DNA of 64,000 bases from Hamiltosporidium tvaerminnensis FI-OER-3-3 (GCA_022605425.2 JAKIMF020000001.1:1054001-1118000); one strand, 5' to 3'. Shown: positions 28,935-59,911, numbered from the stretch's first letter. Notes: generated by a model not told the origin, from the sequence alone. Numbers and translations: made by a program.

Positions 28935-29006
28935 AAAACGATAATCTGGCTTCCAAACAAAATTCGGGTGAAAATACTCAAATACTGTTCGTTGAAACCA
29001 GATTAC
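28935..29006 (-). ncRNA. Candidate Pol III hairpin RNA, copy 1 (72 nt)
   Basis: GTAATCTGGTTTC pairs with GAAGCCAGATTAT; inner stems present; 3' end CGTTTT. CCACA lies 52 nt upstream (29058-29062). Confidence 0.6.
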
Positions 29007-29199
29007 TTGAAATGGTATAAAAATATTTATAAATAAAAATAAAATAATTTTTTATATTGTGGTTTCAATAAAGGAAATATAGAAAAAATCAATTTTTCTT
29101 CCAAAATCAGATTATTTTTTTATTATAAGAAAAATTTTATAACAATAAATTGGTTTTTTGTTAAATATCGAGATAATACTTGTTTTCTCTTAAAATATT

Positions 29200-33194: not shown

Positions 33195-34667
33195 ATGGAA
33201 CTTTTAAATTGGGAAAATATTTACAATGTAGTCAGTAACTTAGATTCTGACAATAATGGTATGTTATTAATGTTAGAAAAAGAAGAAGAAGAATATAAAT
33301 TACACGGTGACTTACCTGACAATCTATCTAAAGATATAAAAACTTTTTTAAATAAAATAAAAGCAAAAGGTGACCTTTCCGAAGTATTTCTATTTGAAGT
33401 GAACAAAGACTATTCTCTTAACATTTCATTTATAGCCTTATGTGGTATTTCAAGTAAAAAAAGCAATTTGGCTGACTCTGTTATGCAAGCATCTGGTTTA
33501 GGGGTTGAAATTTTATCAAAAATAAAAATAACCGATATTGCAATTCCAGACTCAGAAATATTTGCTTCAGTAGTTCAAGGGGCAATTTTATCTTCGTATT
33601 CTTATAATTTTTTAAAAGAAAAAAAAGAAGAAACTAAAATTAGAATTGCACCATGGAAAAATGAAAACAATTTTAAAGAATCTGTTGAAATTGCAATTTC
33701 TCAAAACTTTGCCAGATTTTTAGCTGATACACCAGCAAATCTAATGACACCGAGTCATTTTGTTTCCTACGCTCAAAAATATTTGGATGATAAAAATGGA
33801 ATCTCGTTTGAAATTTATGAAAAAGATTTTCTTATTAAAAATAAAATGAATCTTTTTTTGTCCGTAACTGAAGGTTCAGAACAACCACCCAAACTTTTAT
33901 ATATCAAATATAAAGGAAATAATTCTGATAAAGTAGATCTTGGTTTGGTTGGTAAGGGAATTACATTTGACTCAGGGGGTATTTCTTTAAAACCATCTTC
34001 TAATATGGGTGACATGAAAGCTGATATGACAGGGGCAGCAGCTGTTTTATCTGTCATGGGGTTGGCATCTTTTTTTAAAAGAAAAATTAATATTTCTTGT
34101 GTCATTCCTCTTTGTGAAAATTTACCTTCAGGAAAGGCTTCAAAACCAGGGGATGTAAGAATTTCTATGTCTGGAAAAAGTGTAGAAATTGATAATACGG
34201 ATGCAGAGGGCAGATTGGTTTTAGCAGATGCAATTACTTTAATTCAAAAAGAAAAACCAGAATATCTTATTGATGTTGCAACACTGACAGGTGCTATATG
34301 TATTGCCTTGGGTCCTCTATATGCAGGATTATTTTCAAATGATTTTAAATTTACTGAAATGATAAAAAATGCAGGTATGAAAGCCAGTGAAGAGGTGTGG
34401 GAAATGCCGATAAATGAAAAATATAAGAAATTTATTACATCAAACGTGGCTGACTTAAAGAATACAGGAGAAAGTAGAGAAGGTGGATCTTGTACAGCAA
34501 CTGCATTTTTAAGTGAATTTGTTGAAGAAAATACCAAATGGGCTCATATTGATATTGCAAGTGTCATGTCAGGTTCAAAAGTAAATTCTAGTTTGTTTGG
34601 TAAAGGAATGACAGGCTATTCTGTTAGGTTATTGAATGCGTTGATGGAAACGTTGGAGAAAAAATAA
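33195..34667 (+). CDS. Cytosol leucine aminopeptidase (M17), 490 aa
   Basis: VGKGITFDSGGISLK, MKADMTGAAAV, NTDAEGRL, DVATLTGA and WAHIDIA motifs. CCCC-ATG. Confidence 0.96.
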   Translation: MELLNWENIYNVVSNLDSDNNGMLLMLEKEEEEYKLHGDLPDNLSKDIKTFLNKIKAKGDLSEVFLFEVNKDYSLNISFIALCGISSKKSNLADSVMQASGLGVEILSKIKITDIAIPDSEIFASVVQGAILSSYSYNFLKEKKEETKIRIAPWKNENNFKESVEIAISQNFARFLADTPANLMTPSHFVSYAQKYLDDKNGISFEIYEKDFLIKNKMNLFLSVTEGSEQPPKLLYIKYKGNNSDKVDLGLVGKGITFDSGGISLKPSSNMGDMKADMTGAAAVLSVMGLASFFKRKINISCVIPLCENLPSGKASKPGDVRISMSGKSVEIDNTDAEGRLVLADAITLIQKEKPEYLIDVATLTGAICIALGPLYAGLFSNDFKFTEMIKNAGMKASEEVWEMPINEKYKKFITSNVADLKNTGESREGGSCTATAFLSEFVEENTKWAHIDIASVMSGSKVNSSLFGKGMTGYSVRLLNALMETLEKK

Positions 34668-37598: not shown

Positions 37599-37708
37599 AA
37601 AAAAATGAGGCCGGAGCCTCACACCTCTCGAAGCACACATGTCGTCCTTGCGCAGGGGCCATGCTAATCTTCTCAGTGTTGTTCCAAATCAATAGCGTGG
37701 TTACCCAC
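37599..37708 (-). ncRNA. U6: U6 spliceosomal snRNA (variant ACUGAGA box)
   Basis: Minus strand: 5' stem-loop GTGG-GTAA-CCAC, then TTGGAACAACACTGAGAAGATTAGCATGGCCCCTGCGCAAGGACGAC (conserved U6 core with AGC triad and ISL), a 3' hairpin and a T7 Pol III terminator. Confidence 0.96.
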
Positions 37709-37711
37709 AAA

Positions 37712-37772
37712 GGGGGTCAGAAAAAAATATTTAAAATAAAAAAAGTAATTTTCAAATAAAAATTGTGGTTTT
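37712..37772 (-). promoter_or_regulatory. Putative U6 upstream promoter: AAACCACAAT (about -56 to -60), TATA-like tract, CCCCC at -4 to -8
   Basis: Position matches a PSE/USE plus TATA layout. The same CCACAAT recurs 52-56 nt upstream of three hairpin units. Confidence 0.55.
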
Positions 37773-55600: not shown

Positions 55601-55967
55601 ATTATCAAAAAATAACCAATTTTATATCAATAAGAAGAGAGCCACAATCAAATCGAATGCTCATAATGAACTCTGAAATTTTTAATAGTCCGATGAAATT
55701 AACGTCATGATTAGATATTAATAGAAGCCAGAAAGTATCGCAAGATAATACAATAACAAACAGAAGGAACTGACAACCAATACAATCGAATAAGAAGTTA
55801 AATTCAACTCAAACAAATACATAAATTTTAAGCCCGTAAATTTAAATAAAAATATCGAAATCAAAGCACTGTCTTCAAATTTAAAAAGTGTACCTTATAA
55901 GTAAACAAGGCAAAATATATTATACATGAGCGGAGAGAAAAAAAGTTTCATACTAAATAATCTAAAT

Positions 55968-56039
55968 AAAACGGTAATCTGTCGCCATAGACAGTCTTGG
56001 AAAATATTTCCAACTAACTGTTAATTGCAACTAGATTAC
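55968..56039 (-). ncRNA. Candidate Pol III hairpin RNA, copy 2 (72 nt)
   Basis: Stems GTAATCT/AGATTAC, GTTGC/GCGAC, ACAGTT/GACTGT and TTGGAAA/TTTCCAA; 3' end CGTTTT. CCACA lies 56 nt upstream (56095-56099). Confidence 0.6.
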
Positions 56040-56199
56040 AACAAATTGTGATTAAAGGGTTTTATAAATTAAAACTCTCAATAAGCATTGGAATTGTGGT
56101 ATGATTTAACAATTAATAAAATTATTTTTTTCCAAATTTAGATATATTTTCTATTGCAAAAAAAATGTTTTTGAATAATACATGCCATATTTTCTTGAC

Positions 56200-57200
56200 T
56201 CTCTAACCCTTTTCTATTCTGAATTTTCCACTAATCAAAACACAATCCAGCAGATCATTACAACTTTTAAATCATATAAATTTTGAAAGAAATTATATTA
56301 GTGTTTTTTTACGCGAGAACTGCGTCTGTTTTAGAGGCTATTCAATTGTTTTATTAGGAAATAAAAACTCTTTATGAAATTGCCACATGTAAAACTGAAA
56401 GTTCCGTAAAATTAAAAATTTTATGAAAGTTAAAAACAATTTTTTTAGATTTTTTTTTATTTTAAAATATCAATTTCTATAAAGGGTAAGTTGTATTTGT
56501 TCTTCATAATTTTAACGCTTTTCTGGTTTAGTATTGATAACCGCTTCTTAAACCTTCCATCGATACCTATTGATACCTATATCTCAAGTTTTTTCAAAAT
56601 TTATTGCGTACAACTAATATAAATAGGCGAGGCAGTTGCCAAAGATCATTAATTTCTGTTGTATGAACTGCTATTATAAATTGAAATATTGCTCTTCCGA
56701 AATACAGCAGCAATTTCATTTAATCTAAACTTACTGAATTGAAATAACTTCCAGTCAAGATATATTTCGGATACTTACAGGGGTCTATTTTTGGTTGGAA
56801 ATGACATGTTACTGGACATAACCTGCTTCTAAGCTTTTCTGACCCCATACAATGTATGGTTTTTTGTATCCTTGGGCGCGATTCCTCTAACTTGAGTAGA
56901 AAGACTATGTTTCGAATATTTTTTCCTGGCATTCGTTACAATTTCAGTCGTAGTTTTCAATCTATTTACAAAAAAAACCAAAAAATATTTTTTGAGAAAA
57001 TATTTGATCTTTTTTACATCCGTTTCCATTTTATGAATTCACAAAATCAACCGAGAATTTGGGATGGTTATAATACCCTCAAAAATATAAGATTGACTTC
57101 ACATGAATTTTATCAAATAATTGCTAATCACAAAGTTTTGTATGTGGATATACTCGTTCTTCTTACAATATAAATGTTCTGTACAACAAATATAATTCAA
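56200..57200 (-). mobile_element. Strongly decayed 3' copy of the RLE non-LTR retrotransposon
   Basis: ORF 56829-57029 (METDVKKIKY..TTTEIVTNARKKY) is a remote echo of the K.RKYDLL..TWDGIVTKYH region. Confidence 0.35.
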
Positions 57201-57617
57201 ACTTTCAATAAATATTTTCACAAGTTGATATGAAAATATTTTGAAATAAATTTATACATAAAATGTTATTTCAATATGAATGAAGATATAGTTTAACAGG
57301 GTACGGAAAAGGAGAGCCGAAACGGTATATTATAATTAAACGTGTGTATTAAGCCATGAAAACGTATCAATGAGAGCTAGTCAAGAAATTGTTTATAAAA
57401 TAAACGTTGGGGGAAACGGAACTAACAAACAAGACATACTGATAAAAAATATGACTTGAATTAGAAGAATACCAAATATTTAATTTCTTCATTTTTCAAT
57501 AAAATGACAGGAATAAAAATAGTGAATACAAAGTCTTAAAAAAAATTTCATCATAAGCAAGCGGAACAGATTAGGAAATAAGAGCAGTGGGAGAAAACAA
57601 TGAATACTTTAGTTAAT

Positions 57618-57696
57618 AAAACGGTAATCTGGTCTCCTGCAACAGCGTTGGAAAGATAGGAACTTCCGATTAATTTGTGAAAAGAAACCAGATTAT
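57618..57696 (-). ncRNA. Candidate Pol III hairpin RNA, copy 3 (79 nt)
   Basis: 14-bp outer stem TAATCTGGTTTCTT/AGGAGACCAGATTA, inner GGAAG/CTTTCC, 3' end CGTTTT. CCACA lies 53 nt upstream (57749-57753). Confidence 0.6.
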
Positions 57697-57801
57697 ATAA
57701 TTCGGGATTAAAAAATTATAAAACAAAAAATATAAATTATTTTGAAATTGTGGTTTCAATAAAGAAAATATAGATATATTAATTTATTTTTTCATATTAG
57801 A

Positions 57802-59911
57802 TGTCACAGGCCAATAAAGCCTCCCAAGTCCAATAGAACCAACTTTATTTCATATGATTTATAGAACCTCGTTATTTCTAATGATTTTTAGAACCCCGTT
57901 ATTTTCATATATTTTACTTAAGGGCCACATATTTGAAAAGAAAGAAAGTGATTTTTTCTTTAAATTTAATAGGGATCTCTTTAAAAAATGCTTATCAAGT
58001 TTTTAACCTGTATTTTCCGCCAAAATAAAAATATTTTAAGTTTTGCTGGAATAAAAATAAAAACTTTTATGATAGTACTTAAATAATAAAAAAGGTCTAT
58101 TATAATTGCAAAGTAAATTAAATTACAAACGTTTTTTAAACTGTTCTGGTATTAACATCATTGTTTTTTACTTCAATCATGTTGTTCATCAAAATAGCGG
58201 CAACTTTAAAAACGGAATTATCGTAAAAAGAGTCAAAAGGCGCTACTTGTGTTTTAGTATTCATATTTAAGCCTTTTTTTTCAAAACTTGATCTCCAATA
58301 GACAAATCTTTCTTGAATTCATTTGAATTGTTGCTTTCTATAATTCTTTCTCTATGCTTTTTAAAATGCTTAGCCACATCCGAACGAATCTTACTATCGC
58401 TTCCGAGATCATCAGCTATTATAGTGGTGGTTACCGTTTCAATAAATTCTTAATGTTCATCCGAAGCGATTTCCAGGATCCATTGTGTATCCGCTGCATT
58501 TTCTTCGACTAAAACTATATCAGGATCTATATCAATAGCAGATCCTATCATACTGGCTTCGTATTTAACTATTATGCTTCCAGAAAGTGGATTGTTAAAG
58601 CCTAGTTTTCAGAAGAAAAGCATAAATAGAGATTTGTTTCTTGCACTATGTACTGAACTGTTATATACATAAAAAACATTATTAAAATTTTTCTTCACCT
58701 TTTTTCACCTGTTTCGTTCAATTTCTTCGCTGGCCATCTTTTTATGGTCTGATTTATACGTTCCACTTGACCTTGCGCCTTTAAATTGCATGGCATTTCA
58801 TGTATAAATTTGATGTTAAGATCAGTTAAAAAGGCTTCGAGTAGTGCATTTTTAAACTCTAGGCGGTTGTCGGATTGTATTGCCACCGAGACGCCGACGT
58901 TGTCAAATAAAAATTTTAATGAATCTTTTACAAATTTCAAAGTTTTATTAATCAGCTTAAAGCACCAGAGATGTTTTGTGTATCTGTCGATTACATTAAG
59001 ACACGAGCAATTTCGATCATTTTGATACTTATCTTTTTAGATCTACACAATCCATCATAAAAAGATAATATTTTTTGGTAATATGGTTTATATATACTGG
59101 CTGAATTATTTTTAGAGAATTAAACCGACTACATGCTTCACAGTCTTTTACATACTCTTTTATGTATGCTTTGGAAATCCCATAGTATTTTTGTACAATC
59201 AAACTCATCATTTTATTTACTCCAATGTGTGCAACAGCATGCTTCGTTTGAATAATTTGTTTAATCAAGGCAGTTTCAAATGCAAAAACAGCTCTGCTTA
59301 GATGATCGCGTCTTTTAGAACTAATATCATCTCCGAGCAAAGTAAAATGTTATGGCTCAATAATTATATTTCTTTGGTATACTCAGCTGGATACTGATCG
59401 GTGTTTTAATATGTTTTAAGAATTTCTTTTTCTTGCCTATTTTTACAACTTAAAATCTTTGCCATTTTGGTTGCATTATATTTTTATACATATAATCGAA
59501 ATACTTGAAAAAAACAAATAATATGAAAGCTTTAAATTAATTCATATAAAATTTTATGTGTTTTAGTGTCTGAATTAAATTTTACGACGAAATTTTGCTT
59601 TATGATACTAGCAAATGCAAAAAAACAAAAAAGGCAAATAAGAACTCAAAAGAATAATATTTATTTTATTAAATAATTCATTCATAATAAAATATCCTAT
59701 TGTGTATACAAAAGAAATTTTAAGAAGGATGAATAAGAAATATCGGAAAGGAAACTAAAATATAAGATGTAGGAATAAGAGAAATAAATAGGCTATAATG
59801 GTATAGGAATTCAAGGGCTATATGAAAAAATAAAGGGTTTTATGAACTTTAAAAAGATATAGGAAATAACGTGGGTTCTATTGGAGACGCGAGGTTTATT
59901 GGCCTGTGACA
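57802..59911 (-). mobile_element. Ginger-type DNA transposon (retroviral-like integrase), pseudogenised
   Basis: 17-bp perfect TIR TGTCACAGGCCAATAAA (imperfect to about 40 bp) and 5-bp TSD TTAGA (57797-57801, 59912-59916). H-x3-H..C-x2-C zinc domain and DDE core (MMDCVD, QSDN, QGQVERINQTIKR) in ORF pieces 59029-59340 and 58695-58940. Confidence 0.9.

What the first reader, a model, noticed from the sequence alone, without database searches (positions are those of the whole stretch)
55968..56100. Hairpin copy 2 shows compensatory substitutions: structure kept, sequence changed
Seen: GTAATCTAGTTGCAATTAACAGTTAGTTGGAAATATTTTCCAAGACTGTCTATGGCGACAGATTACCGTTTT. The outer stem is GTTGC/GCGAC here, GTTTC/GAAGC in copy 1 and GTTTC/GAGAC in copy 3, i.e. 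a U-A to G-C swap plus alternating U-A/U-G pairs. The apical stem is TTGGAAA/TTTCCAA here but ATTTGAGT/ACCCGAAT in copy 1. Total length is still exactly 72 nt. Inference: selection acts on RNA structure; a constant terminal stem with a variable core suggests a protein-bound scaffold with a variable payload or guide.
Basis: partly seen in the sequence, partly recalled or inferred. Interest (0 to 1): 0.8.

Follow-up and report, generated by a model that had tools for sequence, protein, structure and literature searches.

The report
New Pol III hairpin RNA family
The hairpin is one of nine genes in the Daphnia parasite Hamiltosporidium tvaerminnensis that use the same promoter as U6 and SRP RNA to make a roughly 70-base rod-shaped RNA whose folding, not its sequence, has been preserved; it matches no described RNA family and its job is still unproven.

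Summary
The hairpin at 55974-56039 (minus strand) folds far better than shuffled sequence (z -6.4). It belongs to a family of nine genes in this genome: three in the window, two in a nearby inverted duplicate, three on contig 1 and one on contig 2.

Each gene has an AACCACAAT box 58-64 nt upstream, a TATA box near -27, an RNA that starts GUAAUC and ends GAUUAC, then two bases and TTTTA. The same box precedes U6 and SRP RNA but is absent from U2, U4 and U5. The genes are therefore very probably RNA polymerase III genes.

Seven distinct members share four helices. P1 never changes. P2-P4 show many two-sided compensatory changes.

No Rfam family matches, and it is not a tRNA or U5. Ro60 and the major vault protein were not found in the genome. 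The variable arms have no near-complementary targets in the parasite genome, so the "guide payload" idea is unsupported there.

Function is inferred. It is either a ready-made Dicer substrate (Dicer and Argonaute are present, and no second RNase III gene was detected) or a protein-bound scaffold RNA. No RNA reads were obtained.

The scan had already found this promoter class on another contig (note s1-599454), but not this RNA family.

The parts
55974..56039 (-). Copy 2 RNA (the finding): a 66-nt hairpin that starts GUAAUC and ends GAUUAC. It has helices P1-P4 and a 3-nt apical loop.
   Evidence: z -6.4; 63.9 bits with model R1.
55968..55973 (-). Copy 2 tail: a CG spacer then TTTT, followed by A. 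It is the putative Pol III terminator.
   Evidence: NN-TTTTA follows P1 in all nine genes.
56060..56068 (-). Copy 2 TATA box (TTTATAAAA), running from -29 to -21.
56093..56102 (-). Copy 2 upstream promoter box ATACCACAAT (PSE-like), starting 61-63 nt before the RNA.
   Evidence: The same box lies upstream of U6 and SRP RNA.
28941..29006 (-). Copy 1 RNA: a 66-nt hairpin.
   Evidence: z -5.8; 66.1 bits. The H. magnivora orthologue differs at 2 of 66 positions.
28935..28940 (-). Copy 1 tail: CG then TTTT, followed by A.
29026..29033 (-). Copy 1 TATA box (TTTATAAA).
29056..29065 (-). Copy 1 promoter box AAACCACAAT.
57624..57696 (-). Copy 3 RNA: 73 nt, starting with A instead of G. It has a 14-bp terminal stem and a poorly paired interior.
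   Evidence: z -3.9; 75.6 bits.
57618..57623 (-). Copy 3 tail: CG then TTTT, followed by A.
57716..57723 (-). Copy 3 TATA-like box (TTTTATAA).
57747..57756 (-). Copy 3 promoter box AAACCACAAT.

Best explanation
What it is (well supported). The hairpin is a small-RNA gene. It is one of nine paralogues in Hamiltosporidium tvaerminnensis that are transcribed by RNA polymerase III from an external U6/SRP-type promoter: an AACCACAAT box at about -60 and a TATA box at about -27. Transcription starts at the G of GUAAUC and ends in the TTTT that follows GAUUAC plus two bases.

The 66-74-nt RNA is a rod of four helices:
- P1: 6 bp, sequence invariant.
- P2: 5-7 bp, covaries freely.
- P3: built around ACA/UGU.
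- P4: built around GG/CC.
- The apical loop varies in size.

How it most likely works (inferred, not shown). The transcript is a ready-made Dicer substrate, a natural 'shRNA'. Both ends are set by transcription, so no Drosha-type step is needed; only one RNase III gene, the Dicer, was detected in the genome. Dicer would cut about 22 nt from the ends, which is just above P3, and release a P1-P3 duplex for the single Argonaute. On this reading the invariant first bases are a shared seed, and P4 with its loop is the disposable, variable part.
For: Promoter:
- All nine genes have the box 58-64 nt before the RNA start and a TATA box at about -24 to -29.
- The box also precedes U6 in the window and SRP RNA.
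- It is absent upstream of U2 (2 genes), U4 and U5 (2 genes).
- A similar box precedes U6 in another genus, Astathelohania.
- A SNAPC3 homologue is present.

Gene conservation:
- Across the old duplicates in the window (about 60% identity over about 700 bp), conservation peaks at the box, the TATA box, the two strands of the terminal stem and the CGTTTTA tail.
- Between the contig-12 and contig-1/2 subfamilies, mainly the promoter and RNA remain alignable.

Structure.

Terminator: every terminal T4 is followed by A. All six internal T4 runs are followed by C or G (sequences).

Dicer reading:
- One Dicer (1241 aa, Dicer_dimer plus two RNase III domains) and one full Argonaute are present, and no second RNase III gene was found.
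- The top of P3 lies 22-23 nt from the 5' end in all seven distinct RNAs, even though P2 and the internal loops differ in length (sequences, helix assignment).
- Length variation is concentrated above P3.
- In Neurospora, a fungus, the major microRNA-like RNAs depend on Pol III (PMC3547838).
Against: - There is no expression evidence. The one RNA run laid gave no reads on the stretch, so it is no test. Small RNAs were never examined.
- The terminator is only T4, and the five contig-12 copies carry internal T4 runs.
- The rod is interrupted by internal loops. Copy 3 has lost most of P3, and the contig-2 member has a branched apex.
- Pol III transcripts carry a 5' triphosphate, and here would have a 4-6-nt 3' overhang. 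Neither is ideal for Dicer or Argonaute.
- No near-complementary targets exist in the parasite genome.
- Strict invariance of both strands of P1, with P2 free to covary, is equally what a sequence-specific protein site would give.
- Between H. tvaerminnensis and H. magnivora the RNA is no more conserved than its flanks (2 of 66 changes against 1-3%). That comparison has no power.
Confidence: 0.4

Rival explanations
1. A stable scaffold RNA of a ribonucleoprotein. The full-length 70-nt RNA is the functional form. One or more proteins recognise the invariant terminal helix, the ACA/UGU and GG/CC patches and the U-tail. The loops vary, as they do in Y RNAs, nematode sbRNAs, vault RNAs and dictyostelid Class I RNAs.
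For: - P1 is invariant in sequence on both strands, while the adjacent P2 covaries freely. This is the usual signature of a sequence-specific protein site next to a purely structural helix.
- There are fixed conserved patches at a constant distance from the end.
- The gene set has the same overall design as Class I RNAs: an upstream element about 60 nt away, a stem joining the 5' and 3' ends, a variable interior, many genes and a T-run (PMC7919456).
- No targets were found for the arms.
Against: - No partner is known.
- Ro60/TROVE is not detectable in the genome, nor is the major vault protein (though that search had no positive control).
- No Rfam family, including Y RNA, matches.
Confidence: 0.33
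2. The contig-12 copies (the three in the window and their two duplicates) are decaying or neutral duplicates of a gene whose working copies lie on contigs 1 and 2. On this reading the hairpin in the finding is a relic.
For: - Only the contig-12 copies carry internal T4 runs. Copy 3 starts with A opposite C and has lost P3 pairing.
- The H. magnivora orthologue of copy 1 has diverged as fast as its flanks, and one of its two changes breaks a pair.
- The copies sit among transposons in a segmentally duplicated region.
Against: - Across the three old contig-12 lineages, the promoter box, TATA box, terminal stem and tail are clearly more conserved than the surrounding roughly 60%-identical DNA.
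- Copies 1 and 2 keep fully paired interiors through different sequences.
- All internal T4 runs avoid the A that follows every terminal T4.
- In another strain, copy 2 has 0 changes in the hairpin against 26 in the other 469 nt of the contig.
Confidence: 0.1
3. One reading: a constant protein-binding stem carries a variable guide that pairs with transposon, parasite or host RNAs.
For: The interior is the least conserved part of the roughly 700-bp duplicated unit. Predicted 3' arms would begin with different sequences in different members.
Against: - No sites with up to 3 mismatches exist in the parasite genome for six 22-23-mers covering copies 1-3.
- The interior aligns into shared helices with conserved patches, not unrelated inserts.
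- Most of the interior is base-paired to itself, so it is not free to pair with a target.
Confidence: 0.07
4. A divergent copy of a known RNA, such as U5 snRNA, a tRNA or an H/ACA snoRNA. The 5' end of copy 3 resembles, from memory, the 5' end of metazoan U5.
For: A resemblance recalled from memory between the first 19 nt of copy 3 and animal U5. The apical loops are U-rich.
Against: - Canonical U5 genes lie elsewhere (contig 8, two copies, 42-43 bits). They have a loop 1, an Sm site and a 3' hairpin that the family lacks.
- Global alignment of the family to that U5 is no better than shuffled sequence (z -1.3 to 1.0).
- cmscan finds no Rfam family even at E 10 on 201 nt.
- ARAGORN finds no tRNA.
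- There is no ACA box or pseudouridylation pocket.
Confidence: 0.02

Closest known systems
Dictyostelid Class I RNAs (PMC7919456)
   Same: - Many small genes.
- An upstream element (DUSE) about 60 nt before the start, shared with other small-RNA genes.
- A stem joining the 5' and 3' ends, a variable interior, about 60 nt long, and a T-run downstream that suggests Pol III.
- Function still unclear.
   Different: - Class I RNAs have a short stem whose structure but not sequence is kept, plus a conserved 11-nt motif.
- Here the outermost 6 bp are sequence-invariant, there is no such motif, and the whole RNA is a rod of four helices.
- Class I RNAs are known only in Dictyostelia.
- No Rfam family of any kind matched.
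Y RNAs and nematode stem-bulge RNAs
   Same: From general knowledge: Pol III genes with an external PSE-plus-TATA promoter, ends paired in a conserved stem, variable pyrimidine-rich loops, a U-tail, and small multigene families.
   Different: No Ro60/TROVE gene is detectable. No Rfam family matched at E up to 10. The terminal stem has no bulged-C helix.
Engineered U6-promoter shRNAs and retroviral Pol III pre-miRNAs such as those of bovine leukaemia virus (PMC12498455)
   Same: A hairpin of about 55-70 nt whose 5' end is the Pol III start and whose 3' end is the T-run. No Drosha step is needed before Dicer.
   Different: The viral genes use internal type-2 promoters, and shRNAs are artificial. 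Here nothing shows that Dicer cuts the RNA, and the stems carry more internal loops.
Pol III-dependent microRNA-like RNAs of Neurospora (PMC3547838)
   Same: A fungal precedent for Pol III making precursors of small silencing RNAs.
   Different: The loci and promoter types differ. There is no sequence relation, and no small-RNA data exist for this family.
The array of Pol III small-RNA genes on contig 8 of the same genome
   Same: The same AACCACAAT box and TATA box, a T-run terminator, and small size.
   Different: Those RNAs have an unpaired 5' part of about 25 nt and a 3' hairpin of about 10 bp. They are not closed rods and lack GUAAUC/GAUUAC. Model R1 does not find them.

Membership tests
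Pol III gene with external (type 3, U6-like) promoter | An upstream proximal element shared with the genome's own U6 gene, at a fixed distance | tested here: met
   AACCACAAT lies 58-64 nt before all nine RNAs and 52 nt before U6. It also precedes SRP RNA. It is absent from U2 (2 genes), U4 and U5 (2 genes).
Pol III gene with external (type 3, U6-like) promoter | A TATA box about 25-30 nt before the start | tested here: met
   TATA-type boxes lie at -29 to -20 in the three window copies and are visible in the others. The genome is AT-rich, so on its own this is weak.
Pol III gene with external (type 3, U6-like) promoter | A run of T as terminator directly after the RNA | tested here: inconclusive
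   All nine genes have exactly T4 followed by A. U6 has T7. The contig-12 copies also carry internal T4 runs, all followed by C or G.
Pol III gene with external (type 3, U6-like) promoter | Transcription depends on Pol III | not testable with these tools
   This needs inhibitor, ChIP or run-on experiments.
Pre-miRNA or shRNA-type Dicer substrate | A hairpin whose stem reaches about 22 nt from the paired ends | tested here: met
   Helices P1-P3 reach nt 22-23 in all seven distinct RNAs. P3 is reduced to 3 possible pairs in copy 3.
Pre-miRNA or shRNA-type Dicer substrate | Dicer and Argonaute are present in the organism | tested here: met
Pre-miRNA or shRNA-type Dicer substrate | Small RNAs of 21-24 nt from both arms with a 2-nt offset, bound by Argonaute | not testable with these tools
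   No small-RNA data could be reached. The one RNA run gave no reads.
U5 snRNA (RF00020) | Match to the covariance model; conserved loop 1, Sm site and 3' hairpin | tested here: not met
   cmscan gives no U5 hit at E up to 10. The genome's U5 genes lie on contig 8. There is no similarity to them.
tRNA | Cloverleaf recognised by ARAGORN | tested here: not met
   0 genes in the window.
Y RNA / sbRNA | The Ro60 (TROVE) partner is present, and the RNA matches the Y RNA model | tested here: not met
   There is no TROVE match in six frames and no Rfam match of any family at E up to 10.
Vault RNA | The major vault protein is present in the organism | tested here: inconclusive
   PF01505 gave no match, but the control genomes could not ring either.
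Dictyostelid Class I RNA | A conserved 11-nt motif next to the 5' strand of a short terminal stem | tested here: not met
   The alignment shows no such motif. No Rfam family matches. The defining features are taken from PMC7919456.
H/ACA snoRNA | An ACA box 3 nt from the 3' end, with a pseudouridylation pocket 14-16 nt upstream | tested here: not met
   By inspection of the sequences there is no ACA box after P1, and there is a continuous 13-bp lower stem without a pocket.

The most novel reading that the evidence does not exclude
A eukaryote in which no Drosha-type enzyme was detected makes its microRNA-like RNAs from dedicated U6-type 'shRNA genes'. Pol III would set both ends of a Dicer-ready hairpin. 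The family would keep one invariant 5' seed and diversify the 3' arm. Because the parasite lives inside Daphnia cells and no targets exist in its own genome, the targets could be host transcripts.
Probability: 0.3. Interest if true: 0.8.

Novelty: new variant of a known kind. Interest (0 to 1): 0.55.

Why it matters
- Non-coding RNA inventories of microsporidia so far list a minimal set: snRNAs, RNase P/MRP, SRP RNA and a few snoRNAs (PMC5499648). They describe no upstream snRNA-type promoter box.
- This locus shows that a large-genome microsporidian has a Pol III-specific upstream box, shared with another genus. The box gives a simple way to find unknown small-RNA genes.
- It also shows that the box drives at least one structured multigene RNA family with no described relatives.
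- If the RNAs feed Dicer directly, they would explain how a parasite with no detected Drosha makes microRNA-like RNAs. They would also be the first natural cellular counterpart of laboratory shRNA cassettes.
- If they are scaffold RNAs, they point to an unknown ribonucleoprotein in a very reduced eukaryote.

Tried and rejected
- tRNA: ARAGORN found none.
- Any Rfam family: nothing at gathering score except U6. Nothing relevant at E up to 10 on short stretches of the window copies or the contig-1/2 copies.
- U5 snRNA: a remembered likeness of the 5' end to animal U5 did not survive testing.
- Y RNA and vault RNA: no TROVE match and no MVP match.
- H/ACA snoRNA: no ACA box and no pocket, by inspection.
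- A conserved 12-mer of the terminal stem as a dispersed target: 7 hits against 11 in the control.
- Targets of the arms and interiors in the parasite genome: none.
- RNA evidence: the only RNA run offered gave no reads on the stretch. DNA contigs of other strains were of limited use because the two paralogous pairs map onto each other.
- H. magnivora orthologue of copy 1: too close to be informative, with 1-3% divergence.
- Synteny in Astathelohania contejeani and Gurleya vavrai: U6 was found, but no family member in 38 kb.
- Metagenome pattern scan: 96 stretches, all at chance level with model R1, at most 23 bits.
- My guess that two other box-driven genes are U4 and U1: Rfam did not confirm it at gathering score, and a canonical U4 (47 bits) lies elsewhere, on contig 12.

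Full report
**Observation**

It consists of a 66-nt hairpin (55974-56039, minus strand), then CG, then TTTT. As RNA it folds at -26.5 kcal/mol, against -10.2 +/- 2.5 for dinucleotide shuffles (z -6.4). The other two copies in the window fold with z -5.8 (28935-29006) and z -3.9 (57618-57696). The opposite strands fold less well.

Two details need correcting. Copy 3 is 79 nt, not 72. Its interior, and that of its paralogue, is not significantly paired (core z -0.15 and -1.0).

**Organism**

The window is contig 12, positions 1054001-1118000, of a 21,638,905-base assembly in 17 contigs. The leucyl aminopeptidase encoded at 33195-34667 is 100% identical to a Hamiltosporidium tvaerminnensis protein. 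The assembly statistics match the published genome of that microsporidian parasite of Daphnia: 21.64 Mb, 17 contigs, 26.6% GC (PMC10542269). Earlier notes of the scan gave the same name.

**The hairpin is a gene with a promoter**

All three copies have the following, aligned at the same positions:
- an AACCACAAT box about 60 nt upstream of the first base of the hairpin;
- a TATA box at about -27;
- CGTTTTA directly after the hairpin.

The only Rfam hit in the window is U6 snRNA (37599-37718, minus strand, 63.5 bits). It has the same box 52 nt upstream and a TATA-like stretch.

I then checked which known RNAs of this genome carry the box.
- SRP RNA on contig 2 has it.
- The two U2 genes, U4 and the two U5 genes do not. 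They have a TATA box and CCC directly at the start, as described for Encephalitozoon (PMC5499648).

So the box marks the classic non-tRNA Pol III genes and not the Pol II-type snRNAs. U6 of another genus, Astathelohania contejeani, has AAACCCACAAC at about -55 plus a TATA box. The genome also encodes a SNAPC3 homologue (26 bits, above the Pfam cut-off). Together this supports a PSE-type external Pol III promoter. An earlier follow-up in this scan (s1-599454) reached the same reading for an array on another contig. I saw that array on contig 8. Its RNAs are of a different design.

**Size of the family**

The exact terminal-stem pattern of the window copies occurs five times. Three are in the window. 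Two lie in an inverted duplicate about 40 kb further along contig 12; one of these has a hairpin identical to copy 2 and the other is a diverged paralogue of copy 3.

While looking at other sites of the promoter box, I found genes on contigs 1 and 2 whose RNAs also start GUAAUC and end GAUUAC. A combined pattern (box, 38-58 nt, RTAATC, 45-75 nt, GATTAY) gives nine genes against two hits for the reversed control. A covariance model built from the seven distinct RNAs finds exactly these nine (64-80 bits) and nothing else at E up to 10. One caveat applies: the genome tool scores only the best candidates of a first look.

**Conservation pattern**

- The three window units are old duplicates, alignable over about 700 bp at about 60-63% identity.
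- Three-way identity peaks at the box, the TATA box, the 5' strand of the terminal stem, and the 3' strand with CGTTTTA (0.5-0.7). The downstream part of the unit is at 0.25-0.45. The hairpin interior is at 0.1-0.25.
- Between the contig-12 genes and those on contigs 1 and 2, mainly the promoter, the RNA and about 30 nt after it remain alignable.

This is what a gene made of promoter plus RNA would show.

**Structure**

The seven distinct RNAs share a rod of four helices.
- P1, GUAAUC/GAUUAC, never changes, apart from a G-U pair in copy 1 and an A opposite C in copy 3.
- P2 reads GUUUC/GAAGC, GUUGC/GCGAC, GUUUC/GAGAC, GUCAUU/AAUGAC, GUCAUU/AGUGAC and GCCAUAU/AUGUGGC. These are real compensatory changes at four or five positions.
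- P3 is built around an invariant ACA/UGU, with both flanking pairs covarying (C-G or A-U; A-U, G-U or G-C).
- P4 is UUGG/CCAA or a variant. In the contig-2 member both U-A pairs are replaced by C-G.

Three tests support this:
- RNAalifold on the unguided MAFFT alignment predicts the same four helices, with 7 of 19 pairs kept through two-sided change.
- On that alignment 84% of cells are paired, against 21-44% when the partner is slid by 1-3 columns. Eight pairs show two-sided change against 4.0 in shuffles (2 of 500 reach it).
- A hand-made structural alignment gives 91% paired cells and 11 of 24 pairs with two-sided change, with 0 of 5000 shuffles reaching this. That alignment leans towards the structure, and shuffles do not control for relatedness.

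**What it is not**

- tRNA: none.
- Rfam: no family matches the window copies or the contig-1/2 copies, even at E 10 on short stretches.
- U5: the first 19 nt of copy 3 reminded me of animal U5, but that was memory only. The genome's own U5 genes are on contig 8, with loop 1, an Sm site and a 3' hairpin. The family aligns to them no better than shuffled sequence.
- Y RNA and vault RNA: Ro60/TROVE is not detectable, nor is the major vault protein (without a positive control).
- H/ACA snoRNA: there is no ACA box or pseudouridylation pocket.

**The "guide" idea**

I searched the whole parasite genome, on both strands and with up to 3 mismatches, for six 22-23-mers. These covered both arms of copy 2 and the interiors of copies 1 and 3. 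The only hits were the genes themselves, one paralogue and one three-mismatch site on contig 9. The conserved 12-mer of the terminal stem is not enriched either. Extensive pairing to transposons or genes of the parasite is thus not supported. Seed-type pairing and host targets remain untested.

**The terminator problem**

All nine genes end in exactly T4, whereas U6 has T7. The contig-1 and contig-2 genes have no internal T4. The five contig-12 genes have one or two each. All six internal runs are followed by C or G, and all nine terminal runs by A. From memory, work on yeast Pol III showed that the base after a short T-run affects its strength; I did not check that paper. In H. magnivora one internal run of copy 1 is lost. 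This lessens the difficulty but does not remove it.

**Other genomes and reads**

- The one RNA run offered gave no reads on the stretch, so it is no test.
- In DNA contigs of other strains, the copy-2 hairpin has 0-2 changes. One of these turns a G-C pair into G-U and one breaks a pair. The flanks are at 2-5%.
- The H. magnivora orthologue of copy 1 has 2 changes in 66 nt, one conservative and one breaking a G-U pair. This is the same rate as its flanks, so the comparison is too close to be informative.
- No member was found in 38 kb of syntenic DNA of two other genera.
- A pattern scan of metagenome contigs gave only chance-level hits.

**Function**

What is shown: a nine-gene family with a Pol III-type promoter and an RNA structure under selection. 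What follows is inferred.

The genome has one Dicer (Dicer_dimer plus two RNase III domains), one complete Argonaute, and no second RNase III gene. The top of P3 lies 22-23 nt from the 5' end in every member, although P2 and the loops differ in length. Length variation lies above P3. The first six bases are invariant, like a shared seed. In Neurospora the main microRNA-like RNAs depend on Pol III (PMC3547838). Retroviral Pol III pre-miRNAs show that transcription-defined hairpins can enter Dicer directly (PMC12498455).

I therefore rank a natural shRNA-type Dicer substrate first, at about 0.4. A protein-bound scaffold RNA of the Y RNA or Class I kind comes close behind, at about 0.33. An invariant helix next to a covarying one fits a protein site equally well, and the stems are loopier than ideal Dicer substrates.

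**Novelty**

By design, the family is another case of a small Pol III RNA with paired ends and a variable centre. By sequence and structure it is unrelated to any described family. Neither the family nor the promoter box appears in the microsporidian ncRNA survey that I read (PMC5499648). I rate it a new variant of a known kind, of moderate interest until expression is shown.

Noticed in passing
window 37599-37718 (-), box at 37762-37770: This is the only U6 snRNA hit in the window. AACCACAAT starts 52 nt upstream, followed by a TATA-like stretch, and the gene ends in a T7 terminator. It served as the promoter reference for the hairpin genes.
   Followed up: yes
G000 contig 8, about 216900-280000, minus strand (L041-L047): An array of at least 15 co-oriented genes has the same AACCACAA(T/C) box and TATA box. 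Most encode an RNA of about 55 nt with an unpaired 5' part, a 3' hairpin of about 10 bp (often CUUUCU...AGAAAG) and T4-T7. Several start near ACCUUUG. No Rfam family matches at gathering score.
   Followed up: partly
G000 contig 10 (U2, two copies), contig 12:1687095-1687253 (U4), contig 8:352555-352665 and 382811-382921 (U5): The Pol II-type snRNA genes lack the AACCACAAT box. The U2 and U5 genes share a T-rich TATA stretch ending in CCC directly before the RNA start (TTTTTTATACCC in U2, TTTATACCCC in U5); U4 has a T-rich stretch ending in CCCCT. This matches the TATA-plus-CCC signal reported for Encephalitozoon. The genome thus seems to keep two distinct small-RNA promoter types.
   Followed up: partly
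L090:1700-1880 (Astathelohania contejeani contig SBIQ01000130.1): U6 (77.5 bits) has AAACCCACAAC at about -55 and a TATA box. It lies next to the Rad50-like gene, as in the window. The promoter box and this piece of synteny are shared between genera.
   Followed up: partly
G000 contig 12:1150350-1152200 against window 55900-57800: An inverted segmental duplication about 40 kb away repeats the copy-3/copy-2 pair. The copy-2 duplicate is 98% identical over 201 bp, while the copy-3 duplicate has diverged inside the RNA, including indels.
   Followed up: partly
G000 contig 1:705032-705187 (337-aa open frame, L075): A SNAPC3 (SNAP50) homologue scores 26 bits, above the Pfam cut-off. This suggests a SNAPc-like factor for the upstream box. 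From general knowledge, budding yeast lacks this complex.
   Followed up: no
G000 contig 5:624742-696948 and contig 8:727453-760250; contig 12:366883-467208; contig 1:1482036-1509052: Other sequences that contain the box occur as repeated families: one string eight times, and another seven times with four consecutive copies about 12.8 kb apart. They may be transposons or tandem units that happen to carry the motif, or further gene families.
   Followed up: no
window 57797-57802 and 37774: In copy 3 the homology of the gene unit stops about 100 nt upstream of the RNA, where earlier notes place a Ginger-type transposon. Another note places a retrotransposon just upstream of the U6 box. Insertions directly upstream of Pol III genes may be worth a genome-wide count.
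   Followed up: no
window 57419-57497 (-): There is a weak C/D-box snoRNA-like match (snoR09, 24.5 bits against a gathering score of 50, E 1.2) between copies 2 and 3. It is probably chance.
   Followed up: no
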